Sequence record: NC_048048.2
DNA: 64,000 bases
Strand: one strand, 5' to 3'
Below the pieces are notes generated by a model, which saw only the letters and a program-made list of their open reading frames with translations, searched no databases and was not told where the DNA came from. The position numbers were made by a program, and so were the translations under genes. Shown piece after piece: positions 47,104-61,133 of this stretch. Positions within the stretch are counted from its first letter, which is position 1. The number at the start of each line of letters is the position of its first letter.

Positions 47104-47227
47104 GGCCGCCACCGCCCAGGCTTAACCTTAACGTGGCGTTAAGGTTAAGGCCGAAAATAGTTCAAGAAAGCTGTTGACAGCATAGGAGGCTTATGCGAGA
47201 AAGGCTCATCGAAACGGGAGACACCCC

Positions 47228-47743
47228 ATGGACGACACCTATCCGCCCCTGACCCCCGGCCAGCAAGCCGCCCTGGTCGCCTTCGCCGACCAGCATGGCG
47301 GCCTGGGCGAGGCCTGGAAAGAGGCCCTGAGCGACGCCTGGAGGACGTGCAGCGAGCCCGATGCGCTCAAGGCCGACCTGCGGACCATCCGCAACACCTA
47401 TGGCCCCTCCTGGCTCTATGACGAATACGCCTGGGGCTGGCGCCCGACCCTTCCCGACTGGGAGCGCGCCGGCCGCTGGACCGACACCCCGCCGCAGCCG
47501 ACGCCGGGCAAGGCTCGCTGGAGCGCCGCCTTCGACCCGCCGGCCATCGGCGACCGGGTGCGCGTGACCACCAACGGCCTGGGCTGGGCGCGGGTCACCG
47601 GCTACTTCGTCGAAGCCGACTGGCTGGGCGTGATTGTCAAGCTGGAGGCCCCGGCCGACTGGTATGTCAAACAGAACGGCGGCAACGTCCCCGGCCACAG
47701 CTTCGGGACCGAGATCGCCCTGACCGACCCCGCGACCGACTGA
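47228..47743 (+). CDS. cassette gene, Trp-rich hypothetical with SH3-like C-terminus
   Basis: conserved leader; PAIGDRVRVTTNGLGWARV. Confidence 0.8.
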   Translation: MDDTYPPLTPGQQAALVAFADQHGGLGEAWKEALSDAWRTCSEPDALKADLRTIRNTYGPSWLYDEYAWGWRPTLPDWERAGRWTDTPPQPTPGKARWSAAFDPPAIGDRVRVTTNGLGWARVTGYFVEADWLGVIVKLEAPADWYVKQNGGNVPGHSFGTEIALTDPATD

Positions 47744-47923
47744 CCTGGACGGCCCTGGCTGGGAGACCAGCCGGGGCGAGGCCTAACCCGGCGCGGTTAA
47801 CCTTAACCGCCCATTAAGGTTAACCGCCGGCGCCCTGGGGCGGGCGAAAGAAAATGCAAGAAAACTGTTGACACGCATCTGAGGGCTATGCGAGAAAGGG
47901 CCATCGAACAACGGAGGCCCCTC

Positions 47924-48766
47924 ATGGCCAAGCTATTCAGCGACCTTCAGGACCTTGCCAACTCGACCTATGTCGTGCGCATCGTCGACAATGGCGGCCA
48001 GAGCGCCGACCGCTACACGATCGTCACCGCCGATGGCGACTATTACGCCTACAGCGCCAATCCCGCCCATCCCCAAGGCGTGGGCCTGAGCGGCGAGGGC
48101 ATCGACCCGCAAGTGCTGGTCGACTGGGTGGAGCGCGGCGAAGCCGTCGACCTGACCATCGGCGAGCTACCCGAGGCCGCCGCCCGCTGTCTGCTGGCGT
48201 CGATCAACGCCAGCGTCGAGGACTTCCTGTCGGCTGTCGAGGACCCGACCAGCAACGCCGTGGCCCCGACCCGCGAAAAGGCGGAGATCAATGACGGCGT
48301 GATGGATTGCTTCGGCAAGGGCATCTATCGCGTGGGCGAGGGTTTCGCCGTGCGCATGGATGGCCTGGACGCGGGCGATGATCGCGGCCCCTTCATGAGC
48401 GCTGTCGAGGCGGTCAAGGCCACCCTCCCCGATGAATACGCCTGGGCTGGCGAGGAATACCTGTCGCCGCGCGACATGACCAAGATCACGCCCGAAGCCA
48501 AGCCGCTCGTTCTGGTCCACGCCCTGGAGGCCATTCGCGACTATGAATATCAGCGCGACAACCCCGGCTCGTTCTTCGACGGGCTGAACGAGGACGACAC
48601 TGACGCGGGCCTGGGCATCGTGCGCCGCACGCGCTACCTGTCCAAGGTCACCGATGATGCGACCATCGTCGGGCTGATCGGCGAGGCGCCGGCCTTCGCC
48701 CTGGCCCATGAATGTCTCGACCAACTGTGGACCCTGGCGCAAGAGCGGTGGGAGGCGGGCCAGTGA
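47924..48766 (+). CDS. cassette gene, hypothetical
   Basis: GGAGG SD; RIVDNGGQSADRYTIV. Confidence 0.8.
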   Translation: MAKLFSDLQDLANSTYVVRIVDNGGQSADRYTIVTADGDYYAYSANPAHPQGVGLSGEGIDPQVLVDWVERGEAVDLTIGELPEAAARCLLASINASVEDFLSAVEDPTSNAVAPTREKAEINDGVMDCFGKGIYRVGEGFAVRMDGLDAGDDRGPFMSAVEAVKATLPDEYAWAGEEYLSPRDMTKITPEAKPLVLVHALEAIRDYEYQRDNPGSFFDGLNEDDTDAGLGIVRRTRYLSKVTDDATIVGLIGEAPAFALAHECLDQLWTLAQERWEAGQ

Positions 48767-48966
48767 GCGCCCGCGAACGCCGCGCCCTCTCCGAACTGCT
48801 GGCCCTGTTCCACGCGGTCAACAGCGGCCACGTCAAGGGCCGCAACCCCTACGCCTTCCCGGCCGTCAAGCTCGCCAACGAGGTATTGACGGGCGACCCG
48901 CTGGACGGGGTTTCCACGTCGCCGAAGCCCTGGACCGGCATCGCGAGGCGGACGGCAAGGCCTTGA
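48763..48966 (+). CDS. hypothetical protein
   Basis: GGAGG SD, GTGA overlap. Confidence 0.65.
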   Translation: MSARERRALSELLALFHAVNSGHVKGRNPYAFPAVKLANEVLTGDPLDGVSTSPKPWTGIARRTARP

Positions 48967-49070
48967 TTTTCGAGGTCGGCGGTTGCCCGGACGGCTGCTT
49001 GCTGTCCTACAGCGGCGCGGTTCCGCGCTGCGTCAACTGCGACACCGAATATCCCGAAGAAAACGGTTGA
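48963..49070 (+). CDS. 35-aa Cys-rich peptide
   Basis: TTGA overlap; GCPDGC...RCVNC. Confidence 0.45.
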   Translation: MIFEVGGCPDGCLLSYSGAVPRCVNCDTEYPEENG

Positions 49071-49121
49071 CAGCATAAGGGAGCTATGCGAGAAAGGGTC
49101 ATCAACGGAGACACCCCGCCC

Positions 49122-49262
49122 ATGTGGACCGAAAAGACCTTCAAGACCCGCGCCGCCAAGGAGGCCTGGATCGCCCGCAATGAAGACCGCTATCAGATCG
49201 TCGAGATCGTGGTCTGCAACGCCTACGGCGTGACCTACAAGCCCCTCCGACGCGTCTACTAG
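49122..49262 (+). CDS. 46-aa cassette gene
   Basis: conserved leader; MWTEKTFKTRAAKEAW. Confidence 0.75.
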   Translation: MWTEKTFKTRAAKEAWIARNEDRYQIVEIVVCNAYGVTYKPLRRVY

Positions 49263-49272
49263 GAGACCTCGC

Positions 49273-49464
49273 ATGATCCCCGACTCGGTCCGTAACCCGC
49301 AAGATCATTGGACCCCCATCGCCACCCGCGCCAAGGCTGACGCCCTGGCCTATCGCTACAACCAAGATGACGCCGGCCCCGGCCTCTACGAGGTCCACGA
49401 AAAGGGCGAAAGCTTCGCCATCGCCTACTATGACGAAGACGGCGCCTTCTGCGGCTACGTCTAA
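49273..49464 (+). CDS. 63-aa hypothetical protein
   Basis: AGGAG SD. Confidence 0.75.
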   Translation: MIPDSVRNPQDHWTPIATRAKADALAYRYNQDDAGPGLYEVHEKGESFAIAYYDEDGAFCGYV

Positions 49465-49481
49465 CCCGCTCCTGTCAACTT

Positions 49482-49518
49482 GAAGGCCGGCGCCGCTCTC
49501 CTGGCGCCGGCCTTTTTC
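49482..49518 (+). terminator. intrinsic terminator
   Basis: AAGGCCGGCGCC-loop-GGCGCCGGCCTTTTT. Confidence 0.85.
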
Positions 49519-49673
49519 TTGCCCGCCGCCTGGGTCTTAACCTTAAGGCGAGATTAAGGTTAACGCCGCCTTAAGGTTAACCGGTGCCCCGCATCCCGCC
49601 CGGATGCAAAAAACCTGTTGACACGCATTTCGACCCTATGCGAGAAAGGCGACGAACACGGGAGACACCCCTT

Positions 49674-50672
49674 ATGACCACGACCATTCCCGGCGCCGAG
49701 CATACGATGATCGGACAAGCCGCCTATCGCTCGACCAAGCGCCCCGACCAAGTGCGCGAGATGGCCTATGGCGCGTTCCCGGCCGCGACGTCGGACTCGC
49801 CCTTCGCCGTCAAGCCGGCCTGTGGCAAGGTCCCGAGCGCGCGCGTGCTGGAGGACTTCGACCCCGCCGACGTCTTCACGACCAGAGCCAATGATCGCGG
49901 CGGCTTCTATGCCTCCGCCAACTTCGGCGGCTCTGAGGTGTCGTGGATCAGCATCGCCGGCTATGGCGACACCGAGGAGGCCGCCCGCGCCGATCTCATG
50001 GCCCGGTTCATCGCCGACCGCGACGGCAAGGGCAAATTTGGCCCTCACCATCCCCTGGTCGGCTATGACTGGGGCTATAAGCTCGCCCCGTTCTGGGACA
50101 TGCTGGAGCGCGAGGCCGCCATTCGCCAGCCCTTCAAGCGCCAGCTTTACCTGGGCAAGCTGAAGTCCGGCCGCCCTAATCCCAAGGGCTTTGACGTGTT
50201 CGTCGATGTCGAATGGACCGGCGTGCGCCTGTCGCTGTCGGGCGTCATCGGCCCCAAGGCCAATGGCAACGCCTGGGACGGCGCAGGCCAGATCGTCGGC
50301 AGTCTCAAGCGCAAGGACTTTCTGGAGTTCGCCCCGTCCTGGCATTATGGATCGGCCCTTGACGGTCTGGTCCAGGCCTGGACCCGCTGGCACCTGAACG
50401 ACCTGCGCGCCGGCACGCTTCGGCAGGAAGACCACCTGCGCGGCTATGAGGCCAAGCGCAACATTGAGCAGGCCAAGGCCGCCGGCGCCCATTCTCTCGA
50501 CGCCACCCGCGCCGAACTGGCGCGCGTCCATATGGAGCCCGACACCTGGGAGCGCCACAACGGCCGGCCCTATAGCTACGGCTCCGCATGGCTTCGCGAG
50601 GAGGTCCCCACCTACGTTCTCGACTTCCTGCGCAATCTCCCCGCCCCCACCAAAATCAGCCCCTGGAGGTAA
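49674..50672 (+). CDS. cassette gene, hypothetical multidomain
   Basis: conserved leader; WTRWHLNDLRAG...YSYGSAWLREEVP. Confidence 0.8.
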   Translation: MTTTIPGAEHTMIGQAAYRSTKRPDQVREMAYGAFPAATSDSPFAVKPACGKVPSARVLEDFDPADVFTTRANDRGGFYASANFGGSEVSWISIAGYGDTEEAARADLMARFIADRDGKGKFGPHHPLVGYDWGYKLAPFWDMLEREAAIRQPFKRQLYLGKLKSGRPNPKGFDVFVDVEWTGVRLSLSGVIGPKANGNAWDGAGQIVGSLKRKDFLEFAPSWHYGSALDGLVQAWTRWHLNDLRAGTLRQEDHLRGYEAKRNIEQAKAAGAHSLDATRAELARVHMEPDTWERHNGRPYSYGSAWLREEVPTYVLDFLRNLPAPTKISPWR

Positions 50673-50679
50673 CCCGCCC

Positions 50680-51114
50680 ATGGCCATCAACACCGCCGGC
50701 CTCGTCGGCAAGCTCAAGGAAGCCCTCGCCGCCGCCCCCAACCTGACCCTATGGGCCAAGGAACGCGGCCTCTTCCATCAGAACGTTTCGGCCGCCGCGC
50801 GCGGCGACACCGTGCCGCAAGAAAGCATCGCCAAGGCCCTGGGCTTCCGACGCGTCCACGTCCAGGCCTATCTGGCGCCGGGCGAAGCCCTGCCGCTCCT
50901 GCCGCCCGGCTGGGAGGAGGTGCTTCCCGGTTCGGCGACCCCGGTCGACTGGAAGCCCCGCGACAAGGCCGCCGCCCCCGCCCCGCGCCGGGTCGGTTCG
51001 CCCGACCAGATGGCCAAGGCCCGCGACGCGCGCCGGCCGCGTTCCGCGCCGGTCCAGCCCCCGGCCCAAACCGCCGGCAAGCCTCGCCGCAAGAAAGTGC
51101 AAGAAACCGGTTGA
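50680..51114 (+). CDS. XRE/Cro-type HTH protein
   Basis: NLTLWAKERGLFHQNVSAAARGDTVPQESIAKALGF. Confidence 0.7.
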   Translation: MAINTAGLVGKLKEALAAAPNLTLWAKERGLFHQNVSAAARGDTVPQESIAKALGFRRVHVQAYLAPGEALPLLPPGWEEVLPGSATPVDWKPRDKAAAPAPRRVGSPDQMAKARDARRPRSAPVQPPAQTAGKPRRKKVQETG

Positions 51115-51164
51115 CAGCATAAGGCGGCTATGCGAGAAAGGCTCATCACTTCTGGAGCAAGCCC

Positions 51165-51374
51165 ATGGCCGCCTTCATCTGCACCGCCGATCTCAACGCC
51201 CTGGTCGAGGACATCGCCTATGACGTGGAGATGGAAGACCGCGCCGCCGAGGAACTCGACGGCCTGGACTTTGGCGACCGCTGTTACTACGGCGACCGCG
51301 CTTACCATGGCCAGCTTGAGCTTGCCCGGATCATCGAGACGGCCGTCGCCGCTCATCCCATCCTGTACGCCTAG
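51165..51374 (+). CDS. acidic 69-aa cassette gene
   Basis: GGAG SD downstream of promoter. Confidence 0.75.
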   Translation: MAAFICTADLNALVEDIAYDVEMEDRAAEELDGLDFGDRCYYGDRAYHGQLELARIIETAVAAHPILYA

Positions 51375-51390
51375 CAGAGGAGGCGCCGCT

Positions 51391-51603
51391 TTGCCACGCT
51401 ACCGCACCGACTACAGCGAAGACGACGGAAAAACCGTCATCATCGAGGAAGGCCTGACGAGGACGCAGGCCATGCAAAAGGCCGCGATCCTGTCGCGCAA
51501 GCACGGGACCGCCTACGCCGTCGCCTCCGACGACAAGGGCCGCGACACCGGCCAAAGGGTCTATGCTGACGGCCGGTTCAGCTACCAAGACGACAAGTTC
51601 TAA
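51391..51603 (+). CDS. 70-aa hypothetical protein
   Basis: AGGAGG SD before TTG. Confidence 0.7.
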   Translation: MPRYRTDYSEDDGKTVIIEEGLTRTQAMQKAAILSRKHGTAYAVASDDKGRDTGQRVYADGRFSYQDDKF

Positions 51604-51606
51604 GGC

Positions 51607-51634
51607 AAGAGGCCCGGAGCGATCCGGGCCTTTT
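51607..51634 (+). terminator. intrinsic terminator
   Basis: AGGCCCGG-loop-CCGGGCCTTTT. Confidence 0.8.
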
Positions 51635-51779
51635 GTCTGTCCCCCGCCCGGCGATAACCTTAACGCCGCGTTAAGGTTAACCCCCTGGGACGGGGGGCGC
51701 CGCCGCAAAAACTGCAAGAAAACTGTTGACACGCATTTCGACCCTATGCGAGAAAGGCGCATCAACCACGGAGGACAAC

Positions 51780-52511
51780 ATGTCCACGCACCCGCTGATC
51801 GCCGCCGCCCTGGCCAATCTTCGCGAAGGCCCGGCCATGGTCGCCGGCCCCGACCACGTCACCAAGGTCACGTCCTACGAACTGACCCGCGCGGTCATGT
51901 TCAAGGCCGCCGACCAGATCGAACGGGCTCTGAGCGATTTCCCCGCCCCGCCCGCCTGCCTGGGCGCCTTCCTGATGACCGAGTTCGACCGCCTGGGCGA
52001 CAACTGGGGCGCCCTGGGCGACGCCATCACCGAAGGCGAGGCCCTGGCCAATGCTGAAACCGTCCTGGCGTGGTACTTCAACGCCACCCGTGACGACGGC
52101 GACCCGGACGGCTACACGCTCAAACTCGCTGGCGCCCTGCCCAACGACGCCGAGGCCGCCCGCATCCGCCGCGACTACGCCGCCGCCCTGGAGGCGCAAG
52201 AGCAGGCCAAGGCCGCCGAGGCTCGCGCCTTCGCCGACCGTCACGCCGCCCTAGGTTCGGCCGAAGCCGTCGCCGACCTCCTGGGCTCGCTGTTCGACAC
52301 GCCGCGCACCGCCGCCGAGGCCCTGGGCTACAGCTTCCATTTCGTCCCGGTGATCGGCGGCGAGATCGAGGGCGAACGCGCCTGGATCGGCGAGGACAAG
52401 GCCGGCGAGCGCGTCCATGGCGACTACGCCAGCGCCGACCAAGCCGCCCGCGCCGCCCTCATCTACCACGTGCGCGCCAACCAAGCCGCCCAAATCGTCA
52501 AGGACGCCTGA
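51780..52511 (+). CDS. cassette gene, Ala-rich hypothetical
   Basis: GGAGG SD. Confidence 0.8.
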
Positions 52512-52513
52512 CC

Positions 52514-53140
52514 ATGACCGCCGCCGCATCCCTCTTCGAACAAGCCCAGATCGAGGCCGCTCAAGCCGCCATCGACGCCAACACCGCGCGCGTTGGGCTG
52601 GAGACCGAGGACGCCACGCCCGGAACCGACCTTTTCCACCTGCTGGGCTCGCTGCTGACCTGGGCCGACGCCTGGGCCGTGGACTTCGACGACATCCTGT
52701 CTCAGGTCCGCGAACCGGTGAACCTCTCCAAGACCGTGACCCGCTTTGATCCGGCCACCTATGGCCAAGACCAGCGGCTTGCGGCCATCCGCGCCAATCT
52801 CGACCAGCGCAACACCCCTTCCGTTCCGGTCCTGACCCGCGACGAGGCCGAAACCGAGGCCATGCGCGATCTCGCCGCCGTGGTCGGCAAGGTGATCAAG
52901 GTCCACGATATCACCGGCTATTTCGGCGAGACGGGCCAAGAGGACTTGCGCCCCCACGACGGCGCGCCGGCCTTTTCGGTGATCGTCCTGCCGTCCGACC
53001 GGGACGACGTGATCTACTGGAATGACGAGCATCTGGACGTTCGGTGGAACGTCACCCCCGCGCCGGGCGAAACCCGCCTCTACGAACTGCGCTCGCTCTG
53101 GGTGTTCGGGCGCGGCTATGTCATCGAAGGCGAGGGCTGA
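52514..53140 (+). CDS. hypothetical two-domain protein
   Basis: coupled ORF; DLFHLLGSLLTWAD. Confidence 0.75.
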   Translation: MTAAASLFEQAQIEAAQAAIDANTARVGLETEDATPGTDLFHLLGSLLTWADAWAVDFDDILSQVREPVNLSKTVTRFDPATYGQDQRLAAIRANLDQRNTPSVPVLTRDEAETEAMRDLAAVVGKVIKVHDITGYFGETGQEDLRPHDGAPAFSVIVLPSDRDDVIYWNDEHLDVRWNVTPAPGETRLYELRSLWVFGRGYVIEGEG

Positions 53141-53142
53141 TC

Positions 53143-53451
53143 ATGGCCATGCCCCTGGGCTTGCGGACCACCGCCACCAGCTACGCCATTGACGTGGACG
53201 ATGACCAGTTTCTGGCCATGATCCAGGCCGAAGGCTACAAGGGCGGTGATTTCGAGCCGTCCCTGTTCGACAAGCTGCAAAAGACCCCCGCCCGCGACAT
53301 CGAATATAACGGCCACTTCGGCGCGTCGGTCTATTTCACCCTCACCGAGGAAGACGACACCCCCGCCCTACGCGCCGAGCTTGGCCGGATGATCGCCGAA
53401 CACCTAACCCTCTGCGTCGCCCACATGGCGACCTACGACAAGGACGCCTGA
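53143..53451 (+). CDS. hypothetical protein
   Basis: coupled ORF. Confidence 0.75.
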   Translation: MAMPLGLRTTATSYAIDVDDDQFLAMIQAEGYKGGDFEPSLFDKLQKTPARDIEYNGHFGASVYFTLTEEDDTPALRAELGRMIAEHLTLCVAHMATYDKDA

Positions 53452-53453
53452 CC

Positions 53454-53759
53454 ATGCTGAATATCGAGGACCAGACGATTCGCCTTCGCGAGGAAGGCAA
53501 GAACAAGACCACCACCGTCATTGGCGGGGTGCTGCTGTTCTTCTCCTATTCGACCCTGGTCGGCTTTCGCTGTCCGCGCCTGGGGATGGTGATCAACCCG
53601 GCCGCCAAGAGCTACGGCGTCACCACCGCCCGCCACGTCGGCGAATTTGGCCTAGGCGCGCCGGGCGTGGGTAAAACCGCCACCGAAGAAGACTTTCAGC
53701 GCCTCGCCATGGGCGCGGTCATGGGTTCGTCCGGGCCTGACTACCTACTGTTGAATTAA
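53454..53759 (+). CDS. hypothetical protein
   Basis: AAGGA SD; LFFSYSTLVG...YGVTTARHV. Confidence 0.75.
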   Translation: MLNIEDQTIRLREEGKNKTTTVIGGVLLFFSYSTLVGFRCPRLGMVINPAAKSYGVTTARHVGEFGLGAPGVGKTATEEDFQRLAMGAVMGSSGPDYLLLN

Positions 53760-53875
53760 GCCCCGAGACGAGCACTAGGGCTGTCACGAATCCCCTCATC
53801 TATGACAGCTTAAGAGCCCGTTTAGTCTTCCCTGTACTCTGTTGCGCCAGTATCGGCGCGGAAAGTGATGCGCCT

Positions 53876-53938
53876 ATGAAGCTCCTCGAAGGTGGCGGAC
53901 TGCTGGCCCTGTGCTTCCTTTTCTGGCTCCTCCACTGA
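53876..53938 (+). CDS. 20-aa hydrophobic peptide
   Basis: MKLLEGGGLLALCFLFWLLH*; near-identical protein at 57615. Confidence 0.65.
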   Translation: MKLLEGGGLLALCFLFWLLH

Positions 53939-54002
53939 CAAGGCTGTTGACAGCATCAAGGCCCTATGCGAGAAAGGCTCATCGCCACCGGAGACACCCG
54001 CG

Positions 54003-54269
54003 ATGACCGATTACGACGATTGGGGCCAAGAGGCCTATATGGACCACCTCCATGATCAGGCCGTTGACGAGGCTTTCGAGCGCCACGCCGACGACGCCTA
54101 TGAGGACGACCTGGGCGCCGAAGACCCGGACCTCGAATTCCCCGATGAGGCGGACGACGAGGAAGACCTTCGCCGGGCCGAAGGGCTCATGCCCTGGGCG
54201 ACCCCCGAGGGCGTCGAGCCTGGGCAGTTCCCCCGCCGGGCCTATGACGACGACGAAATCCCGTTCTGA
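54003..54269 (+). CDS. acidic protein ending in an SSB-like C-terminal tip
   Basis: very D/E-rich 88 aa ending RRAYDDDEIPF*. Confidence 0.8.
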   Translation: MTDYDDWGQEAYMDHLHDQAVDEAFERHADDAYEDDLGAEDPDLEFPDEADDEEDLRRAEGLMPWATPEGVEPGQFPRRAYDDDEIPF

Positions 54270-54282
54270 CCTCCTCCCTTCG

Positions 54283-54310
54283 AAAGGCCCCGCGCGGGCC
54301 TTTCTTTTTG
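54283..54310 (+). terminator. intrinsic terminator
   Basis: GAAAGGCCC-loop-GGGCCTTTCTTTTT. Confidence 0.8.
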
Positions 54311-54479
54311 CCCCGCGCCTGGGGTTAACCTTAACGCCGCCTTAAGGTTAACCCGGCCGGATCGTTTTTCGTCTTTTGTGTCGGGCCGTCTTTCGTTTTC
54401 CGTGTCGAGGTGCAAGAAAGCTGTTGACAGCATAAAAGCCCTATGCGAGAAAGGCTCATCGCAACCAAGGAGCCCGACC

Positions 54480-54671
54480 ATGGGACTCAAGATCGAAATC
54501 GACACCGGCAACGAGGCCTTCCAAGGCGTGGCCGGCGAGCATTGCGCCACCCTCCTGCATGAGGTCGCCCGCAAGCTCGATCAAGGCGCCCGCGCCGGCA
54601 ATATCTACGACGGCAACGGCAACAAGGTCGGGACCTACGAACTCGACCACACCGACGCCCCGGAGTCGTGA
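54480..54671 (+). CDS. 63-aa cassette gene
   Basis: AAGGAG SD; IYDGNGNKVG. Confidence 0.75.
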   Translation: MGLKIEIDTGNEAFQGVAGEHCATLLHEVARKLDQGARAGNIYDGNGNKVGTYELDHTDAPES

Positions 54672-54674
54672 GCC

Positions 54675-55001
54675 GTGGCCAGCTACGTCATCCAGATCAG
54701 CGTGAACGTGGAGGTCGATGACCTCCCCGTTCTGTTGGCCGCCGCCATGGCCAAGGCCACGGGCGACGACGGCCTGACCGAAGATCAAGCCCGCGATATC
54801 CTGACCAACTCCGACCCTCTGGGCCGGCCGGATGTCAAGGCCTGTCTGACCATGCTGTTTGATCCGGGCGTCAGCCCGGACGGCACGTCGATCAATGACA
54901 GCATCGTCACCCGCGAGGACTACGACCAAGACGAGGCCATGGACGCCTATGAGGCCGCCCACGGCGAGGACGAGGAAGGGGAAGGCGATGACGAGGACTA
55001 G
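54675..55001 (+). CDS. acidic hypothetical protein
   Basis: GGAG SD; D/E-rich tail. Confidence 0.75.
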   Translation: MASYVIQISVNVEVDDLPVLLAAAMAKATGDDGLTEDQARDILTNSDPLGRPDVKACLTMLFDPGVSPDGTSINDSIVTREDYDQDEAMDAYEAAHGEDEEGEGDDED

Positions 55002-55338
55002 GAGCAAGAAGCGCGTCCCGCAACGCCTGCTTCTGGCCAATCGCGCGCCCCTGGTCGCCGGGCCTGACCCCGCCACCCGCCGCCACTGGTGGGAGCTTCT
55101 GGAGAGCGTCGGCGAGCCGCGCGACCTTGAGGCCCTGCTGGTCGTGGCGATTGACCAAGACGCGGCCGAAACCGTCGCCGGGGTCTTTCCGCTCGCCGGC
55201 GCCGACTATGAAGCCCAGAGCCGCAAGGCCGACGCCCTGGCCGCCGCCACCACCCGCCCCCGCAGCCCTGGCCAGCGCGACGCGCTCAACGCCTATGTGC
55301 TGCACGTCAATGACCCGAACGCCGAGCATCATCCATGA
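54988..55338 (+). CDS. hypothetical protein
   Basis: overlapping coupled ORF. Confidence 0.65.
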   Translation: MTRTRSKKRVPQRLLLANRAPLVAGPDPATRRHWWELLESVGEPRDLEALLVVAIDQDAAETVAGVFPLAGADYEAQSRKADALAAATTRPRSPGQRDALNAYVLHVNDPNAEHHP

Positions 55339-55586
55339 GCTATTCCGGCCCGATCACCATCGCCCAAGGCCAGCGCTTCCAACTAGACAGCTACGGCAAC
55401 GGCGCGGCCTATGCCTTCTATGACCGCACCGCCGGCGCCAGCGTCTGGCTGGACGGCGACGACGCCACCCAGTTTCGCGCCGACTTCGACAACGCCGAAG
55501 ACCGCCGCCCCCATGACGGGCCTGACCAGATCATGGCCCATCTGTGGGACGAACACGACTACGGCGCCGCCGCCACGCCGCTCTAA
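55335..55586 (+). CDS. hypothetical protein
   Basis: ATGA overlap. Confidence 0.75.
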   Translation: MSYSGPITIAQGQRFQLDSYGNGAAYAFYDRTAGASVWLDGDDATQFRADFDNAEDRRPHDGPDQIMAHLWDEHDYGAAATPL

Positions 55587-55590
55587 GTCA

Positions 55591-55620
55591 AGGCCCGCCC
55601 ATCCCCCTGGGCGGGCCTTG
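55591..55620 (+). terminator. intrinsic terminator
   Basis: AAGGCCCGCCCA-loop-TGGGCGGGCCTT. Confidence 0.7.
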
Positions 55621-55729
55621 TCCTGGGCGATCGGCGTTAACCTTAACGCGCAAGAAAACTGTTGACACGCATTGCAGCCCTATGCGAGAAAGAGCGCCTA
55701 GGCCGCTTTGGCCCCTGGAGACTTGCGTC

Positions 55730-56311
55730 ATGGAACACCGCGACTTCGTTCCCCACATCATCACCGCCCGCACCGTGGATGGAACCGTCTACTACGAGTC
55801 CAGCCACTGCACCGCCTTCCATCTGGGCTATGCCCGCGCCATGGACAAGGCCGACGCCGAGCGCCGGGCCGCCGCCTGGAAGCGCGCGGAAAAGGACGGC
55901 GCCCCGCAAGCCACCATCGACGAGGGAACCTATGGGATCACCGTCGTGGCCACCACCTGGGAGGCCCTGGACAAGGCCCGCGCCCATCGCGCCGAGCTTG
56001 AGCGCCTGGAGGCCAATTTCCTCGCCGAGGAGGCCCATGACGACCAGTTCGACGACTATGAAGAACCGGTCATGAGCCCCGAGGATATCGCTGCCGAGGA
56101 AGAGGCCGCCCGCGACTATCTGGCCACCATCCAGCCCCATAAGGCCGGCGACGTGGTGCGGATCACCGACGAGGGCCATCCCCATTTCGGGGCGCTGGCC
56201 ACCGTCGCCGAGGCCGAATGGAGCGGCTATCTCGTCCTTGACCTGGGCGCGGGCCTGACCTGGGGCTGGGCGACGGGCGTGCAATCGACGGCCGATTTCC
56301 CCCAGCCTTGA
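55730..56311 (+). CDS. cassette gene with KOW/SH3-like C-terminus
   Basis: GGAGA SD; KAGDVVRITDEGHPHFGALATV. Confidence 0.75.
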   Translation: MEHRDFVPHIITARTVDGTVYYESSHCTAFHLGYARAMDKADAERRAAAWKRAEKDGAPQATIDEGTYGITVVATTWEALDKARAHRAELERLEANFLAEEAHDDQFDDYEEPVMSPEDIAAEEEAARDYLATIQPHKAGDVVRITDEGHPHFGALATVAEAEWSGYLVLDLGAGLTWGWATGVQSTADFPQP

Positions 56312-56331
56312 AAGCTGGCCTCGCGCCAGCA

Positions 56332-56362
56332 AAAAGGCCCGTCCCCTGGCGGGGCGGGCCTT
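56332..56362. terminator. terminator between convergent genes
   Basis: AAAAAGGCCCG...CGGGCCTT hairpin. Confidence 0.65.
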
Positions 56363-56419
56363 GTCCGGTCCGATCGGGATTAACCTTAACGAGAGATTAA
56401 GGTTAACGCGCCCTTAAGG

Positions 56420-56665
56420 TTAACTGGTGGCGTTCTTGCGCGTCGTGGCCTGGGGATTGGCCTTGAGCCATGCGTCGGCTTCCGTGCGGGTCGAGAACGG
56501 CGCCCCGCCAATGCCCTGCGTGCCGTCATCCCATTGAATGGTCCAACCCACGTCCTTGATTTCCCAATCCTCCGCCACGCCATGGGGAATCGGCGTATGA
56601 AGCGCGATGCGGGTAAAGGGCGCGCGCTTGAGTTGACGGATGCGCGCCGGAATGACTTGCGGCAT
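56420..56665 (-). CDS. 81-aa hypothetical protein on the minus strand
   Basis: AAGGA SD; own minus-strand promoter TTGACA(56744)-N16-TACATT. Confidence 0.75.
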   Translation of the reverse strand: MPQVIPARIRQLKRAPFTRIALHTPIPHGVAEDWEIKDVGWTIQWDDGTQGIGGAPFSTRTEADAWLKANPQATTRKNATS

Positions 56666-56843
56666 GTGTGGAATTTCCTTGACAAAGGCCTTGCCCCATG
56701 GGCGGCCCGAAAGGCGAATGTAGCAAGCGGCGCTTTCGTGTCAAGAAATGCGACATGGGCTAGAATCCTGTTGACACGCATTGCGGTCCTATGCGAGAAA
56801 GATCGGGCAAAGGCGCATCCCGCGCCGCTGGGAGACACCCCGC

Positions 56844-57614
56844 ATGGACCTGACCACCTTTACGGCCAAGGCTGATTTCGTGCTCTGCAATGAGCCGGTG
56901 ACCATCACCGTCAAGCCCGCCGGCCGCCCGCTCTACCTGTCGTTTTCCATCGACCAGATCGGCATGATCGGCGGCGCCGAGGAGCTTTACGCCAAGGCCG
57001 AACAACACGGCGTCGAGGACCTGATAACGGTTCTCAACATTTCCAACGTCCTGTCGCTGAAGTCCATCGAGACCTATGACGACGAAGACCGCGAGGCCGT
57101 CGAAAGCCTGCGCTACGCCCTGCTCATGCTCGACGGCGAGCGCTACGCTTCGGATGTCCAGTTCGAGGACGTGGACGAGGCCGAGTTTTCCAACCGCGAC
57201 GACACCATTGACAGCCGGCAAATCGTCGAGCGGGTCGAGGTGCTTCGGAGCGCCCTGGAAACCGCCGGCTTCGACACCGCCGACCTGTCCGCCCTGGAAG
57301 ACCTCGACGCCGACGAAGCCGTCAAGGACGCCGACCAGCGCGACGCCTTCAACGCCATCCGCGAGGAATTCCTGATCCTGGCGCGCATGGTCGAGGAGGG
57401 CGGCAACTACGGCGAGGATTGGCGGTTCGGCGCGACTCTGGTCCGCGAATCCTACTTCACCGAGTTCGCGCAAGAAGAGTGCGAAAGCCTGGGCTTCATC
57501 TCCAAGGACTTCCCGTCCTGGATCGCCATCGACTGGGAAAAGACCGCCGAAACGATGCTACACGACTACACCGAAATCGACTTCGACGGCGTGAGCTACT
57601 ACGTCCGCGCCTAG
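56844..57614 (+). CDS. acidic ArdA-like antirestriction/DNA-mimic protein
   Basis: D/E-rich; C-terminal YFTEFAQE...SWIAIDWEKTAETMLHDYTEIDFDGVSYY resembles the ArdA C-terminal IDYExxARDL pattern. Confidence 0.55.
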   Translation: MDLTTFTAKADFVLCNEPVTITVKPAGRPLYLSFSIDQIGMIGGAEELYAKAEQHGVEDLITVLNISNVLSLKSIETYDDEDREAVESLRYALLMLDGERYASDVQFEDVDEAEFSNRDDTIDSRQIVERVEVLRSALETAGFDTADLSALEDLDADEAVKDADQRDAFNAIREEFLILARMVEEGGNYGEDWRFGATLVRESYFTEFAQEECESLGFISKDFPSWIAIDWEKTAETMLHDYTEIDFDGVSYYVRA

Positions 57615-57677
57615 GTGAAGCTCCTCGAAGGCGGCGGCCTGCTCGCGCTCTGCTTCCTCCTCTGGTTGCTTCACTAA
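57615..57677 (+). CDS. 20-aa hydrophobic peptide
   Basis: MKLLEGGGLLALCFLLWLLH*; GTG directly after the upstream TAG. Confidence 0.65.
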   Translation: MKLLEGGGLLALCFLLWLLH

Positions 57678-57716
57678 ACCCGGCCGGCGTCCATGACCTG
57701 GGCGCCGGCCTTTTCT
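57678..57716 (+). terminator. intrinsic terminator
   Basis: GGCCGGCG-loop-CGCCGGCCTTTT. Confidence 0.75.
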
Positions 57717-57774
57717 TACCGCGCCGATCGGGGTTAACCTTAACGCCGTCTTAAGGTTAACGGCGGGCCTGGAG

Positions 57775-57877
57775 GCGAGGGCGTCAAGGCCGCGAGCTAG
57801 GATTACACGCGATGGCTTAGCCGGCGTCCAGCCGGCGGCGCCTTCGACCACCGCGAGGCGGCCTTGACCCTCGCAAT
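57775..57877 (-). ncRNA. candidate structured ~100-nt small RNA
   Basis: 17-bp closing stem with a 2-nt bulge, 9-bp inner stem with G-U pairs only on the minus strand, GCCGGC hairpin; minus-strand TTGACA-N16-CGAGAT promoter at 57903-57876. Confidence 0.6.
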
Positions 57878-57988
57878 CTCGCCGATCCGCGACCAAGTGT
57901 CAACCGTTTTCTTTTTCCAAGAAACCTGTTGACACGCATCGAACGCCTATGCGAGAAAGACTCAACGTCAACGCCTGGAACCCTATCC

Positions 57989-58645
57989 ATGCCCCGCACC
58001 GTCACCAAACAGGTCTACACCTTCAAGGAACTGAATCCCAAGGCCAAGCAAAAGGCCATCGAGTGGTATCGTGGCCTGAACGATCAAGACTCCGGTTGGT
58101 GGGATTTCGTCTATGACGAAGCCGACCGCATCGCCGAAGCCTTCGGGATCACCCTGCGCCGCAAGGAAGCCGGCAAGCCCAATAGCGGCCCGGACATCAT
58201 GTTCACCGGCTTCTGGAGTCAAGGCGACGGCGCCTGTTTCCAAGGCCGCTACGAGTCGCCCCAAACCCCGGCCGTCGAAGCCTTCGCCGCCCTGGGGATC
58301 GAAGACGCCACGCTCAAGGCTCTGGCCGCCCGCCTCGACGCCCTGAGCGCCAAGGTGCGCTTGATCAGCACGGTCAAGCACTCCGGTCACTACTATCACG
58401 AGTATTGCACCGACTTCGAAACCGAGCGCATGGTTCCCGACGACGCCGGCGACGACTTCGATATCTACGATTTCGACCACGAGGACGAAAAGGAACTGAT
58501 CGACATTCTTCGCAGCTTCATGAAGTGGATTTATCGCCAGCTTGAGGCCGTGGACGAAGATCGCAATTCCGATGAGACGATCAGCGAAACCCTGACCGAC
58601 TCCGATTACGAATTCGAGGCGGACGGCTCGCCGACCAACGACTAG
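57989..58645 (+). CDS. acidic cassette gene of a widespread mobile-element family
   Basis: VYTFKEL...AKQKAIEW...WWDFVY...FTGFWSQGDGACF...YEFEADG. Confidence 0.8.
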   Translation: MPRTVTKQVYTFKELNPKAKQKAIEWYRGLNDQDSGWWDFVYDEADRIAEAFGITLRRKEAGKPNSGPDIMFTGFWSQGDGACFQGRYESPQTPAVEAFAALGIEDATLKALAARLDALSAKVRLISTVKHSGHYYHEYCTDFETERMVPDDAGDDFDIYDFDHEDEKELIDILRSFMKWIYRQLEAVDEDRNSDETISETLTDSDYEFEADGSPTND

Positions 58646-58700
58646 GCCAAGCCCGCCGCGCCCGGCCTCAACGCCGGGCGCGTGTCGGGTTTTGGTTTTT
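58646..58700 (+). terminator. intrinsic terminator
   Basis: GCGCCCGGC-loop-GCCGGGCGC followed by T-rich tail. Confidence 0.6.
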
Positions 58701-58819
58701 CAAGGTCCTGTTAAGGTTAACGAAAAAAGCCCTCGGACGGCCTGAGAAAAACGCAAGAAAACTGTTGACACGCATCCAAGCCCTATGCGAGAAAGGCTCA
58801 TCGCAACGGGAGACACCCC

Positions 58820-59107
58820 ATGACGACCCAAGCCAAGAAGCGCCGCAAGCGCTACCCGCCCAAGAGCGACGCGGCCAAGGCCCGCGCCGCCGCCAAGAGC
58901 AAGGCGTTCTTCGCCCGTCACGCGCTCAAGGCCACCGAGGCCACGATTGCCGCCATGAAGGCCGGCGATCAAAAGGCCGTCCAACGCCACGCCAAGGACG
59001 CCCGGCGCCTGACCCGCTGGATGAACCACAAGCGCGACATCGCCGCCGCCTTCGCGGCCGTCTTCAACATTCGGGCCGCCGCCCAAGCCCTGAGAGCCGC
59101 CGCATGA
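58820..59107 (+). CDS. basic Ala/Lys/Arg-rich cassette gene
   Basis: conserved leader. Confidence 0.8.
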   Translation: MTTQAKKRRKRYPPKSDAAKARAAAKSKAFFARHALKATEATIAAMKAGDQKAVQRHAKDARRLTRWMNHKRDIAAAFAAVFNIRAAAQALRAAA

Positions 59108-59319
59108 CCCGTCGCCCTGCCTTTCTGACCGTCCTGGGCGGGATTGGCCTCATCCTGGCCAGCTTCGTCCTTTCGGCCGCCAGCGCCCCGGAAAAGCGGG
59201 TTCTCGTGGGTCAATACTGCGACGGCGACCCCGTGCGCCTCTACGGCCTGGAAGACGGCGAGGAAGCCGCGCAAGCGTGCGCCATCGTCGAAGTCCACGC
59301 CCTGCCCAAGGGCTTCTGA
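59104..59319 (+). CDS. small secreted or membrane protein
   Basis: MTRRPAFLTVLGGIGLILASFVLSAASA; two Cys. Confidence 0.65.
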   Translation: MTRRPAFLTVLGGIGLILASFVLSAASAPEKRVLVGQYCDGDPVRLYGLEDGEEAAQACAIVEVHALPKGF

Positions 59320-59321
59320 CC

Positions 59322-59579
59322 ATGGCCGCCCCGAACGACAGCCGCGAGGAGCCGGTCAAGGTCGAAGACCTCAAGGGCGGCATGATGTGCGATCTTGAGG
59401 GCGACATGTACGCCGACAACGCCGGGCGCTTCCCGGAATTCGAGTTCGCCTATGCCGTCGTCGTCGAAGTCGACACGGCCCCGCGCTACGAGGCGCCGGG
59501 GACGGTCCTGGTCGAGTTCGACAAGATCACCGTGGCCTTTCCCAAGGGCCACACCCTGCCGACCATCAAGGAACCCTAG
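59322..59579 (+). CDS. hypothetical protein
   Basis: coupled ORF. Confidence 0.75.
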   Translation: MAAPNDSREEPVKVEDLKGGMMCDLEGDMYADNAGRFPEFEFAYAVVVEVDTAPRYEAPGTVLVEFDKITVAFPKGHTLPTIKEP

Positions 59580-59581
59580 AC

Positions 59582-60115
59582 ATGGAACGCCTCAACGTCC
59601 ACGTGCTGACCGTCACCTATGACAGCGGCAACCCCGTCCCGCCGTTCGTCGCCCTGGGCATGTCCAAGGAGGAACTTGACGACACCCTGGAGGCCCTGGC
59701 GCGCGAGGAAGTCGATAACCGCTATTTCGAGGAAGAAGACCTCTTAGACGACCTCGCCAAGTTCCTGACCGCCGAACGCGTCGCCGAGCTTGAGCCCCTG
59801 GGCCTGGACGCCATCGGCCTACTGACTCCGGTCGAAATCGTCGACATGGCCAAGCGCTTCGCCTCGATCACGCCAAGCTTTGACGTGCTCCCGCTCTACC
59901 GCGACCCGCCGCCCGTCCGCGCCTTCGATCTCGACGACCGCGAAGCCGCCGCCGTCCTGACCGGCCTGCGCATGATCCAAGCCCAAGGCGTCCCGGACGA
60001 TCTCGACGACCTCGCCACCAATGGCGGCGCCTTCGAGCCCCTGGACGGCGACGCCATCGACGGGCTCTGTGTGCGGATCAATTTCGACGTGACCGGCGAG
60101 GCGCCGGCCTCCTGA
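59582..60115 (+). CDS. acidic hypothetical protein
   Basis: AAGGA SD. Confidence 0.75.
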   Translation: MERLNVHVLTVTYDSGNPVPPFVALGMSKEELDDTLEALAREEVDNRYFEEEDLLDDLAKFLTAERVAELEPLGLDAIGLLTPVEIVDMAKRFASITPSFDVLPLYRDPPPVRAFDLDDREAAAVLTGLRMIQAQGVPDDLDDLATNGGAFEPLDGDAIDGLCVRINFDVTGEAPAS

Positions 60116-60195
60116 CGCAAGAAAGCTGTTGACAGCATAATCCGCCTATGCGAGAAAAGGCTGTCAACGGCGATCCCCGCCGCATGGAGACACCC

Positions 60196-60540
60196 ATGAA
60201 GTTCATCAAGACCGACATCCTCGACCACGGCCGCGCCTCGACCCTGCGCAACGCCCTGGGCACGGCCCTGGAGCGCTACACCGAAATCGGCAAGGAATTC
60301 GAGGGCTACCTGAACGACTATCAGGCCCTGGACGAGGCGGGCAAGGAAGCCTGGAAGGCCCGCAACCACTGGATCAACCCGCGCGCCCTGCCCGACCTCA
60401 AGACCCAGTTCGAGCGCCAAGCCGCCGACGTGCAAGACCTCATCAACTGGCTTGACGGCGACAAGTTCATGAACGAAGACGGCGATTTCCCCAAAGGGAC
60501 CGAGTTCACCATTGTCGCCGGCCTGATCCGCGACTTCTAA
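60196..60540 (+). CDS. cassette gene, hypothetical
   Basis: GGAGACACCC leader. Confidence 0.8.
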   Translation: MKFIKTDILDHGRASTLRNALGTALERYTEIGKEFEGYLNDYQALDEAGKEAWKARNHWINPRALPDLKTQFERQAADVQDLINWLDGDKFMNEDGDFPKGTEFTIVAGLIRDF

Positions 60541-60550
60541 ACGCCCTGGT

Positions 60551-60579
60551 CAAGGCCCGCCCTCACGGCGGGCCTTTTC
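60551..60579 (+). terminator. intrinsic terminator
   Basis: AAGGCCCGCC-loop-GGCGGGCCTTTT. Confidence 0.8.
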
Positions 60580-60734
60580 CTTGACCTCGCGCCGTTGTTA
60601 ACCTTAACGTGCAATCGTTCGCCTGTTAACCTTAACGGGACATGCCTGATCCGTTAACCATAGCCTGCAAAAAAGCTGTTGACTCGCATCCAAGCCCTAT
60701 GCGAGAAAGGGTCATCAGCAACGGGAACGATCCC

Positions 60735-61133
60735 ATGACCCAAGAATACACCGCCGAAGAACGCCAAGCCAAGTTGACCGAAATGGCCGATCACTGGCGC
60801 GAGCAACTGAAGGACGCCCAAGCCCGCCTGGACATGACCGTCCTCGTCGGTCAAGGATTCGTCTGCGCTCTGGAGCGCGATCTTTCCATGGCTATCCGCG
60901 CTGACGGTCCCGACCGCTATCGCCTGTGGCCAGTATCGGCGCGCATGGTTCCCATCCTCCACTTCACCAAACTTGACGCCATGCGGGTCGCCGCGCACTG
61001 GAATGGCAACCTCCCCGACGATAAGCAGGACCTGCGAGTCGTCGCCACCCATTACCGCGACGTGCTTCAAGCCTATGTCGAGACCGCAACGGCGCAAATC
61101 GCCTGGATCGAAGGCGGCTGCAAGGCCGCCTGA
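60735..61133 (+). CDS. cassette gene, hypothetical
   Basis: GGGA SD after promoter. Confidence 0.8.
   Translation: MTQEYTAEERQAKLTEMADHWREQLKDAQARLDMTVLVGQGFVCALERDLSMAIRADGPDRYRLWPVSARMVPILHFTKLDAMRVAAHWNGNLPDDKQDLRVVATHYRDVLQAYVETATAQIAWIEGGCKAA

What the first reader, a model, noticed from the sequence alone, without database searches (positions are those of the whole stretch)
54003..54269. SSB C-terminal tail mimic expressed from its own cassette
Seen: an 88-aa, very acidic, low-complexity protein with no OB fold, ending DDDEIPF-stop, with a dedicated promoter and terminator. Known: bacterial SSB ends in an acidic D-D-x-I-P-F tip that docks RecQ, ExoI, PriA, RecO and DNA Pol III subunits. 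Inference: a free SSB-tip decoy that titrates host genome-maintenance enzymes or SSB-sensing defences at the start of infection.
Basis: partly seen in the sequence, partly recalled or inferred. Interest (0 to 1): 0.78.

Follow-up and report, generated by a model that had tools for sequence, protein, structure and literature searches.

The report
Phage protein with host SSB tail
A giant Caulobacter phage makes a small, very acidic protein with no DNA-binding fold whose last six residues are identical to the docking tail of its host's single-stranded-DNA-binding protein, so it most likely plugs into, and blocks or hijacks, an enzyme that normally docks on that tail.

Summary
The window is the last 64 kb of Caulobacter phage CcrSC. 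The ORF at 54003-54269 is CcrSC_gp025, annotated hypothetical. It has 88 aa, 32 D/E against 5 R, and ends DDDEIPF-stop. It lies between a copy of a 19-fold repeated host-type promoter motif and a hairpin terminator, inside the 23.9 kb terminal repeat, so there are two copies per genome.

All 120 Caulobacter and Caulobacteraceae SSBs I retrieved end in DDEIPF. In bacteria that ending is almost exclusive to SSB. gp025 has no detectable fold or family. Its last 33 residues are invariant in relatives despite synonymous changes, and the most divergent relative still encodes DDDEIPF.

The pure "decoy" reading needs amending on four points:
- Two other unrelated CcrSC proteins, an HNH endonuclease and gp372, also end DEIPF.
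- Many non-SSB proteins on viral contigs carry the same tip.
- The phage has no detectable SSB of its own.
- About 26 invariant residues precede the tip.

I therefore read gp025 as a targeted SSB-tail mimic that docks on one particular tail-binding protein. Whether it inhibits that protein or recruits it was not tested. I found no homologue outside the genus Bertelyvirus and no published precedent.

The parts
53947..53977 (+). Promoter-like repeat upstream of gp025: a TTGACAG -35-like box, then a CTATGCGAGAAAGG block
   Evidence: Exact copy of a motif found 4 times, plus 15 copies of a sister motif. All are on the + strand at 43.7-63.6 kb, with 0 expected by chance. Conserved in CcrBL9, C2 and BL47. 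The -35 part fits the Caulobacter RpoD consensus TTGaCgS (PMC8144410). No transcript data.
53990..53994 (+). Ribosome-binding site GGAGA, 8 nt before the ATG
   Evidence: Read directly from the sequence. The same GGAGAC leader recurs after most promoter copies.
54003..54269 (+). CcrSC_gp025 coding sequence: 88 aa plus stop, an acidic protein with no OB fold
   Evidence: pN/pS is 0.23-0.43 against relatives. No family, PHROG or PDB match.
54003..54167 (+). Residues 1-55: acidic, predicted helical, the more variable part
   Evidence: AlphaFold2 helices 4-35 and 49-59 at low confidence. Composition. pN/pS 0.24-0.59. 72% identical in the metagenomic relative P0003.
54168..54245 (+). Residues 56-81: invariant proline-rich linker that includes an M-P-W motif
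   Evidence: Identical in CcrSC, CcrBL9, C2, BL47 and J4, with 2-7 synonymous and 0 non-synonymous changes over residues 56-88. G-x-MPW, PG and PR are kept in the 44%-identical piece of L257. Predicted coil.
54246..54266 (+). Residues 82-88: DDDEIPF, the SSB C-terminal tip copy, with Phe as the last residue
   Evidence: Last six residues identical to 120 of 120 Caulobacteraceae SSBs, of which 118 end DLDDEIPF. Invariant in all relatives examined.
54282..54309 (+). Intrinsic terminator: 9-bp GC-rich stem, 5-nt loop and a T-run
   Evidence: A different hairpin plus T-run sits at the same position in C2 and BL47.

Best explanation
gp025 is a small, largely disordered acidic protein. It is expressed from its own host-type promoter in the terminal repeat.

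Its C-terminal DDDEIPF is a copy of the host SSB tip. I propose that the tip inserts into the pocket that an SSB-interacting protein uses to dock on SSB-coated single-stranded DNA.

The invariant 26-residue segment before the tip, and possibly the acidic helices acting as a nucleic-acid-like surface, would add contacts. That would make gp025 a tight and selective competitor for one partner, or a few, rather than a general sponge.

The proposed result is that a host genome-maintenance enzyme is uncoupled from SSB-coated phage DNA intermediates.

Shown:
- identity of the tip with the host SSB tip;
- its position at the very C-terminus;
- its conservation;
- absence of a recognisable SSB domain;
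- the cassette layout.

Inferred:
- binding to a tail pocket;
- which partner is bound;
- that the effect is inhibition;
- early timing.
For: - The tip equals the host tip. A Caulobacter sp. SSB (NF004972 E=4.5e-74) and 120 of 120 close SSBs end DDEIPF.
- LDDEIPF is the SSB tail in 5,795 of 18,841 alphaproteobacterial assemblies (PMC13490951).
- In bacteria the ending is nearly exclusive to SSB. Of 120 ORFs with this ending, 108 have the SSB OB domain and 7 more are cut SSB fragments.
- Against chance: DEIPF occurs 3 times among 4,012 phage ORFs, always C-terminal, with 0.0003 expected.
- Purifying selection: 0 non-synonymous against 2-7 synonymous changes in the last 33 codons.
- The most divergent relative still encodes DDDEIPF although the linker is only 44% identical.
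- No OB fold or any family match.
- E. coli SSB recruits at least 17 partners through its nine-residue tip (PMC10018359).
- Blocking that contact with small molecules is an established inhibitory principle (PMC5872125).
- Cassette layout and double gene dose in the repeat.
Against: - No binding, structural or expression data exist.
- The AlphaFold2 model is of low confidence.
- The phage seems to lack its own SSB (PMC3556154). Its own T7-like polymerase and RecE-like exonuclease may themselves need the host tail, so a competitor could harm the phage unless it is selective.
- The same tip on an HNH endonuclease and on gp372, and on helicase-primases and many unknown proteins on viral contigs, shows that phages also use the tip for recruitment. 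Inhibition is therefore not the only reading.
- The host strain CB15's own SSB was not read. The comparison rests on congeners.
Confidence: 0.45

Rival explanations
1. Docking tag or adaptor. The tip does not block anything. It delivers gp025, and whatever its N-terminal helices hold, to a protein with an SSB-tail pocket. That protein could be host-encoded. It could also be phage-encoded, for example the T7-like DNA polymerase, which in a phage without its own SSB is expected to recognise the host SSB tail.
For: - Three unrelated CcrSC proteins share the tip, one of them an enzyme, the HNH endonuclease (PF01844 E=9e-9; phrog_11604 E=3e-36).
- On IMG/VR viral contigs the tip sits on gp2.5-like SSBs, helicase-primases and many other proteins.
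- No SSB was detected in phiCbK-like phages, and host proteins were suggested to complete the replisome (PMC3556154).
- From my own knowledge: the acidic C-terminal tails of the T7 SSB and T7 helicase both dock on T7 DNA polymerase.
Against: - gp025 has no recognisable second domain to deliver.
- It lies in the repeat block of orphan genes, far from the replication module.
- Its extreme acidity fits a competitor or nucleic-acid mimic better than a bridge.
Confidence: 0.27
2. gp025 acts on host SSB itself. As an acidic, single-stranded-DNA-like polypeptide that carries SSB's own tip, it binds the DNA-binding face of SSB and changes how much free SSB is available or how SSB binds DNA.
For: - Net charge of about -27 with no lysine.
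- From my own knowledge: the SSB tip can fold back on SSB's own OB fold when DNA is absent.
- The phage depends on host SSB.
Against: - The tip-to-OB contact is weak in the studied systems.
- The invariant proline-rich linker has no counterpart in SSB. The host linker is Gly-rich and ends in SFSADL before the tip.
- There is no direct evidence.
Confidence: 0.1
3. gp025 is a generic double-stranded-DNA mimic against restriction or other nucleases, of the Ocr or ArdA kind. The IPF ending would then be incidental or serve another purpose such as stability.
For: It is a small, very acidic protein in a block of orphan genes with host-type promoters.
Against: - No match to any DNA-mimic family.
- No confident fold.
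- The strongest constraint lies on the C-terminal 33 residues, not on the acidic part.
- The exact host tip appears three times in one phage.
Confidence: 0.08
4. The ending arose by chance, or the ORF is not a real gene.
For: None beyond the small size and the biased composition.
Against: - The expected number of C-terminal DEIPF endings is 0.0003, and 3 are observed.
- The ORF is conserved with synonymous changes in five relatives.
- It is annotated in every Bertelyvirus record.
Confidence: 0.02

Closest known systems
C-terminal tip of bacterial SSB (SSB-Ct; DDDIPF in E. coli, DLDDEIPF in Caulobacteraceae)
   Same: - An acidic run followed by I-P-F as the very last residues.
- The last six residues are identical to those of the host genus.
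- It sits on a segment predicted to be coil.
   Different: - No OB fold and no Gly-rich linker.
- 88 aa in total.
- Residue -7 is D where the host has L.
- An invariant Pro-rich segment with M-P-W precedes the tip.
Phage and prophage SSBs that carry a host-like tip (DUF669 prophage proteins with DDDIPF, PMC13687109; gp2.5-like and other phage SSB families ending DDEIPF in IMG/VR)
   Same: A viral protein that copies the host SSB tip, presumably to reach host partner proteins.
   Different: Those proteins bind single-stranded DNA and replace SSB. gp025 has no detectable DNA-binding domain, so it can only compete or bridge.
Acidic C-terminal tails of the T7 SSB (gp2.5) and T7 helicase-primase (gp4), which dock on T7 DNA polymerase (my own knowledge; T7 replisome parts named in PMC3556154)
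   Same: - An acidic tail ending in an aromatic residue used as a docking module on several proteins of one phage.
- CcrSC has a T7-like polymerase and three tip-bearing proteins.
   Different: - The CcrSC tips copy the host SSB tip exactly.
- None of the three carriers is a recognisable SSB or helicase.
DNA-mimic proteins of phages and plasmids (Ocr, ArdA and similar)
   Same: Small, strongly acidic proteins in regions of host-modifying genes.
   Different: - No sequence or confident structural similarity.
- In gp025 the conserved part is the tail, not the acidic body.
Synthetic competitors of SSB-partner contacts (small-molecule inhibitors of the DnaG-SSB contact; PMC5872125)
   Same: They occupy the SSB-Ct pocket of a partner protein, which is the proposed mode of action.
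   Different: They are laboratory reagents. gp025 would be a natural, genetically encoded version with extra specificity elements.

Membership tests
Bacterial SSB (PF00436 / TIGR00621) | N-terminal OB-fold domain that binds single-stranded DNA | tested here: not met
   No Pfam hit at E<=10. No hit with an OB profile built from 108 SSBs. The AlphaFold2 model has no strands (low confidence).
Bacterial SSB (PF00436 / TIGR00621) | Gly/Gln/Pro-rich disordered linker between the OB fold and the tip | tested here: not met
   The gp025 segment before the tip is Pro-rich with M-P-W and two R-R pairs. The host linkers are Gly-rich and end in SFSADL before the tip. There is no similarity beyond the tip.
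Bacterial SSB (PF00436 / TIGR00621) | Acidic C-terminal tip ending I-P-F | tested here: met
   DDDEIPF-stop. The host genus has DLDDEIPF.
SSB-Ct type docking motif (short linear motif) | Phe is the last residue, leaving a free carboxylate | tested here: met
   The stop codon follows TTC directly at 54267. The same holds in CcrBL9, C2, BL47 and J4.
SSB-Ct type docking motif (short linear motif) | The motif matches the SSB tip of the host lineage | tested here: met
   6 of 6 residues identical to 120 of 120 Caulobacter and Caulobacteraceae SSBs, including isolate Root655. The SSB of strain CB15 itself was not read.
SSB-Ct type docking motif (short linear motif) | The motif lies on a flexible, exposed segment | tested here: inconclusive
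   Residues 60-88 are modelled as coil, but the whole model has pLDDT 57.
SSB-Ct type docking motif (short linear motif) | Binds the hydrophobic pocket and basic rim of an SSB-interacting protein | not testable with these tools
   No complex prediction or binding data were available.
DNA-mimic anti-restriction proteins (Ocr / ArdA) | Membership of the family by sequence or fold | tested here: not met
   No Pfam or PHROG match. No PDB sequence match. The model is too poor for a fold search.
Phage SSB families (gp2.5-like, phrog_18154, phrog_9002) | Sequence similarity to the family | tested here: not met
   The only PHROG hit is phrog_7384 at E=2.8. Profiles of nine clusters of tip-bearing viral proteins find nothing in CcrSC.

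The most novel reading that the evidence does not exclude
Phages that lack an SSB of their own put an exact copy of the host SSB tip on several unrelated proteins, wiring them into the host SSB-partner network. gp025 would then be the first natural, free-standing competitor for the SSB-tail pocket. It would act as a host-takeover or counter-defence factor that switches off a chosen host genome-maintenance enzyme early in infection. The many small non-SSB proteins ending DDEIPF on viral contigs would be further, independently evolved members of this class.
Probability: 0.35. Interest if true: 0.8.

Novelty: new variant of a known kind. Interest (0 to 1): 0.62.

Why it matters
The SSB tail is the hub through which bacteria bring replication, recombination and repair enzymes to single-stranded DNA. 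It is also studied as an antibacterial target.

A natural protein that presents this tail without any DNA-binding domain would show that phages exploit the hub by mimicry. It would also point to which partner matters most for a phage that replicates with a T7-like polymerase but without its own SSB.

Three tip-bearing proteins in one genome, and dozens of unrelated tip-bearing proteins on viral contigs, suggest a general docking code. Such a code could be read from sequence alone and used to predict phage-host pairs and protein contacts.

Tried and rejected
Searches that found nothing or little
- Pfam, PHROG and PDB sequence searches with gp025 gave nothing usable.
- The word-indexed search of 5.8 billion proteins found only Bertelyvirus proteins. 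The full HMMER scan of 1.84 billion representatives found only a Bertelyvirus protein and one phage-like metagenomic contig.
- tblastn against phages found only Bertelyvirus. blastn against plasmids found nothing.
- Neighbouring repeat genes have no informative family matches.
- Literature searches for a free SSB-tail decoy or mimic in phages found none. That library is not complete.
- The supplement of PMC13490951 is not held.

Structure
- AlphaFold2 of gp025 was of low confidence, so I ran no fold search.
- AlphaFold2 of gp372 (pLDDT 61) gave helices plus a three-stranded sheet. It is not a recognisable OB fold and is too uncertain to search with.

Looking for a phage SSB. All three attempts were negative:
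- tblastn with the Caulobacter SSB;
- PHROG scan of replication-module ORFs;
- profiles of the bacterial OB domain and of nine viral clusters.

Other points
- I considered and rejected the idea that gp025 is a truncated host ssb copy. There is no similarity beyond the tip.
- One search_dna_similar call failed on a length limit and I corrected it.

While planning I recalled from memory a few short SSB and T7 tail motifs and a guess at the Caulobacter SSB ending. None was used as evidence or as tool input. The DNA pattern was back-translated from the last six residues of gp025 itself, which are also quoted in PMC13490951.

Full report
WHERE THE WINDOW COMES FROM

The window matches Caulobacter phage CcrSC (MH588547.2, 317,489 bp, genus Bertelyvirus, host Caulobacter vibrioides CB15) at 100% identity. 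From the coordinates of the match and the record length, the window is the last 64 kb of the record. Window positions from about 40055 to 64000 are the right copy of a 23,946 bp direct terminal repeat. The left copy is identical over the 14.4 kb I compared. The ORF of the finding is annotated as CcrSC_gp025, hypothetical protein. It is therefore present twice per genome.

THE OBSERVATION

The ORF at 54003-54269 (+) encodes 88 residues ending DDDEIPF, followed directly by TGA. It has 32 Asp+Glu, 5 Arg and no Lys.

It has no Pfam, PHROG or PDB sequence match even at permissive thresholds. Confidence is low (pLDDT 57, pTM 0.20). It supports "no OB fold" only weakly, and I did not use it for a fold search.

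The cassette has these parts:
- At 53947-53977 lies a TTGACAG...CTATGCGAGAAAGG motif. It has 4 copies, and a sister motif (TTGACACGCAT-N9-CTATGCGAGAA) has 15 more. All are on the + strand between 43.7 and 63.6 kb, each a few tens of bases before a GGAGA and a start codon. None is expected by chance.
- The -35 part fits the Caulobacter RpoD consensus TTGaCgS. The -10 region fits GCtANAWC only partly (PMC8144410). The E. coli-type consensus scan reports nothing here.
- A 9-bp GC-rich hairpin with a T-run follows the stop at 54282-54309. In C2 and BL47 the sequence there differs but again forms a hairpin plus T-run.

"Own promoter and terminator" is thus well supported by sequence, though not by transcript data.

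IS THE ENDING MORE THAN CHANCE?

I read the whole non-redundant CcrSC genome (plus the window) and listed every stop-to-stop ORF of at least 40 codons in six frames, 4,012 in all. DEIPF occurs three times. All three are the last five residues of an annotated gene. The expected number of C-terminal occurrences is about 0.0003.

THE HOST TAIL

- The hit in a Caulobacter sp. genome is a 159-aa protein that matches the SSB models (NF004972 E=4.5e-74; TIGR00621) and ends SFSADLDDEIPF. A Caulobacteraceae and a Phenylobacterium genome give the same.
- Searching with that SSB returned 120 close relatives, 76-98% identical. Several are named Caulobacter sp., including isolate Root655. All 120 end DDEIPF and 118 end DLDDEIPF.
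- A recent paper reports LDDEIPF as the SSB tail in 5,795 of 18,841 alphaproteobacterial assemblies (PMC13490951).
- The E. coli form is DDDIPF (PMC5872125).

gp025 therefore carries the alphaproteobacterial, host-type form of the tip, identical over the last six residues. I did not read the SSB of strain CB15 itself.

HOW EXCLUSIVE THE ENDING IS

Among the 120 bacterial ORFs with this ending, 108 have the SSB OB domain. Seven more are Gly-rich SSB fragments cut by the end of the fetched stretch. Five ORFs remain without an SSB domain. In cellular genomes the ending is in practice a signature of SSB.

CONSERVATION

Homologues exist only in Bertelyvirus phages: CcrBL9, C1, C2, J4, BL47, RB23 and two unnamed isolates.
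- Residues 56-88 are identical in all relatives examined. CcrSC, CcrBL9 and C2 differ by 2-7 synonymous and 0 non-synonymous changes there.
- The N-terminal part evolves faster, with pN/pS of 0.24-0.59.
- A full HMMER pass over 1.84 billion representative proteins added one more relative, on a 7.5 kb phage-like metagenomic contig.
- There the gene as assembled lies in two reading frames, with one frameshift. It could be an assembly error or a pseudogene.
- The first piece is 72% identical to residues 2-56 of gp025.
- The second piece, read as it stands, is 44% identical to residues 54-88. It keeps G-x-MPW, PG, PR and the full DDDEIPF-stop.

WHAT CHANGES THE PICTURE

First, the two other CcrSC proteins ending DEIPF are unrelated to gp025 and to each other.
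- gp112 is an HNH endonuclease in the head-gene region (PF01844 E=8.8e-9; phrog_11604 E=2.8e-36). It has an acidic tail ending DADEIPF.
- gp372 is a 143-aa protein of unknown family ending PLDDEIPF, the exact seven-residue host form.
- CcrBL9 keeps both tails.
- In J4 the gp372 homologue, 45% identical, ends in I-P-F plus one further residue.
- In C2 the HNH gene has one premature in-frame stop relative to CcrSC, and its annotated product does not end in the tip.
- The HNH homologues of phiCbK and of a Brevundimonas phage have no acidic tail at all.

Second, the same scan on IMG/VR viral contigs also stopped at 120 loci.
- Only 29 of those ORFs have the bacterial-type OB domain.
- The 88 others of at least 40 aa form 41 clusters.
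- These include gp2.5-like SSBs, two small phage-SSB families, helicase-primases and a Pam3 gp34-like family.
- Many are of unknown function, among them small acidic proteins with no SSB domain.

Third, CcrSC has no detectable SSB.
- None is annotated.
- tblastn with the Caulobacter SSB finds only low-complexity noise.
- Profiles of the bacterial OB domain and of nine viral clusters find nothing.
- The replication module holds a T7-like polymerase, an exonuclease subunit, a RecE-like exonuclease and helicases, but no SSB.
- The phiCbK genome paper reached the same conclusion for phiCbK and its relatives. It suggested that host proteins complete the replisome (PMC3556154).

INTERPRETATION

I regard the tip as a functional copy of the host SSB docking motif with about 0.75 confidence. 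It is identical to the host form, sits at the free C-terminus, is under strong constraint, is otherwise almost exclusive to SSB, and was acquired three times in one genome.

What gp025 does with it is inferred. gp025 has no domain that could bind DNA, so it cannot replace SSB. It can only occupy a tail pocket. A global sponge seems unlikely for two reasons. The phage itself probably relies on host SSB and its tail, and a bare tip would not need 26 further invariant residues.

I therefore favour a selective, two-part ligand. The tip sits in the pocket, and the M-P-W linker, and perhaps the acidic helices on the DNA-binding face, contact the same target. This would uncouple one host genome-maintenance enzyme from SSB-coated phage DNA (0.45).

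The main rival is that the tip is a delivery tag, as it plausibly is for the HNH endonuclease. The pocket might then even belong to a phage protein such as the T7-like polymerase (0.27). Less likely are action on SSB itself (0.10) and a generic DNA mimic with an incidental tail (0.08). Chance is excluded for practical purposes (0.02).

Early expression is suggested only by the host-type promoter and by the position in a T5-like long terminal repeat. PMC3556154 draws that analogy for the repeat itself.

COMPARISON WITH WHAT IS KNOWN

The motif is the well-studied SSB-Ct. E. coli SSB recruits at least 17 partners through it (PMC10018359). Phage and prophage SSB-like proteins that copy the host tip have been noted (PMC13687109).

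gp025 is not a member of the SSB family, because the defining OB fold is absent. It is not a member of any DNA-mimic family either. In the full-text library I could search, I found no description of a free, domain-less carrier of the tip.

I file gp025 as a new variant of a known kind: SSB-tail mimicry on a protein that is not an SSB.

A SLIP TO RECORD

While planning I recalled a few short tail motifs from memory. The scan pattern came from gp025's own last six residues.

Noticed in passing
L006:27094-27552 (record 51040-51498, gp112) and L010:11873-12304 (record 235819-236250, gp372): Two further CcrSC proteins end in the host SSB tip. One is an HNH endonuclease with an acidic tail ending DADEIPF. 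The other is a 143-aa orphan ending PLDDEIPF. Together with gp025 they are the only three DEIPF occurrences in the phage's six-frame ORFs.
   Followed up: partly
L015 (phage C2, HNH homologue): Relative to CcrSC, the C2 HNH gene has one premature in-frame stop, and its annotated product does not end in the tip. I did not check whether this is shared by C1, J4, BL47 and RB23.
   Followed up: partly
L257 (Logan contig SRR27946880_1473): This contig carries the most divergent gp025 relative. As assembled it is in two reading frames, with one frameshift. The second frame still ends DDDEIPF-stop. It could be an assembly error or a pseudogene.
   Followed up: partly
window 53876-53938 (+): An unannotated 20-codon ORF encodes a hydrophobic peptide ending LWLLH. 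CcrBL9 has the identical sequence. C2 keeps the start and stop with mostly synonymous changes. The end of the peptide is also seen upstream of the gene on L257. It may be a small membrane peptide.
   Followed up: partly
window 53780-53809: A conserved inverted repeat, GCTGTCA-N16-TGACAGC, lies upstream of the micro-ORF. It is kept in CcrBL9 and C2 while the flanks diverge. Its function is unknown.
   Followed up: no
window 43700-63576 (+): There are 19 near-identical promoter-like units. Each has an A-rich GCAAGAAA block, a TTGAC box, a CTATGCGAGAA block and a short leader with GGAGAC. They head the gene cassettes of the terminal repeat, whose products are almost all orphans.
   Followed up: partly
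window 43140-63034; nearest to the finding 54331-54345 (inside the palindrome 54324-54352): The window holds 13 TTAA-N7-TTAA sites (the CtrA-box form) against 0.01 expected, and 12 of them lie at 43.1-63.0 kb. Four sit in a GTTAACCTTAA-N7-TTAAGGTTAAC palindrome. One lies between the gp025 terminator and the next promoter. This fits the CtrA-site enrichment reported for the repeats of these phages (PMC9437464).
   Followed up: partly
L137-L256 (IMG/VR contigs): Of 120 viral ORFs ending DDEIPF, only 29 have a bacterial-type SSB domain. The rest include gp2.5-like SSBs, small phage SSBs, helicase-primases, a Pam3 gp34-like family and many unknowns. Small acidic non-SSB proteins such as L207 and L171 (104-109 aa) are among them.
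   Followed up: partly
L107 and L129 (bacterial genome contigs): Two long bacterial non-SSB ORFs end DDEIPF. L107 is 615 codons stop-to-stop, and its tail closely resembles that of the viral helicase-primase cluster, so it is probably prophage-borne. L129 is 345 codons.
   Followed up: no
L008 (record 123947-173946): The replication module has a T7-like DNA polymerase, an exonuclease subunit (phrog_192), a RecE-like exonuclease (phrog_434) and helicases. It has no recognisable SSB or single-strand annealing protein.
   Followed up: partly
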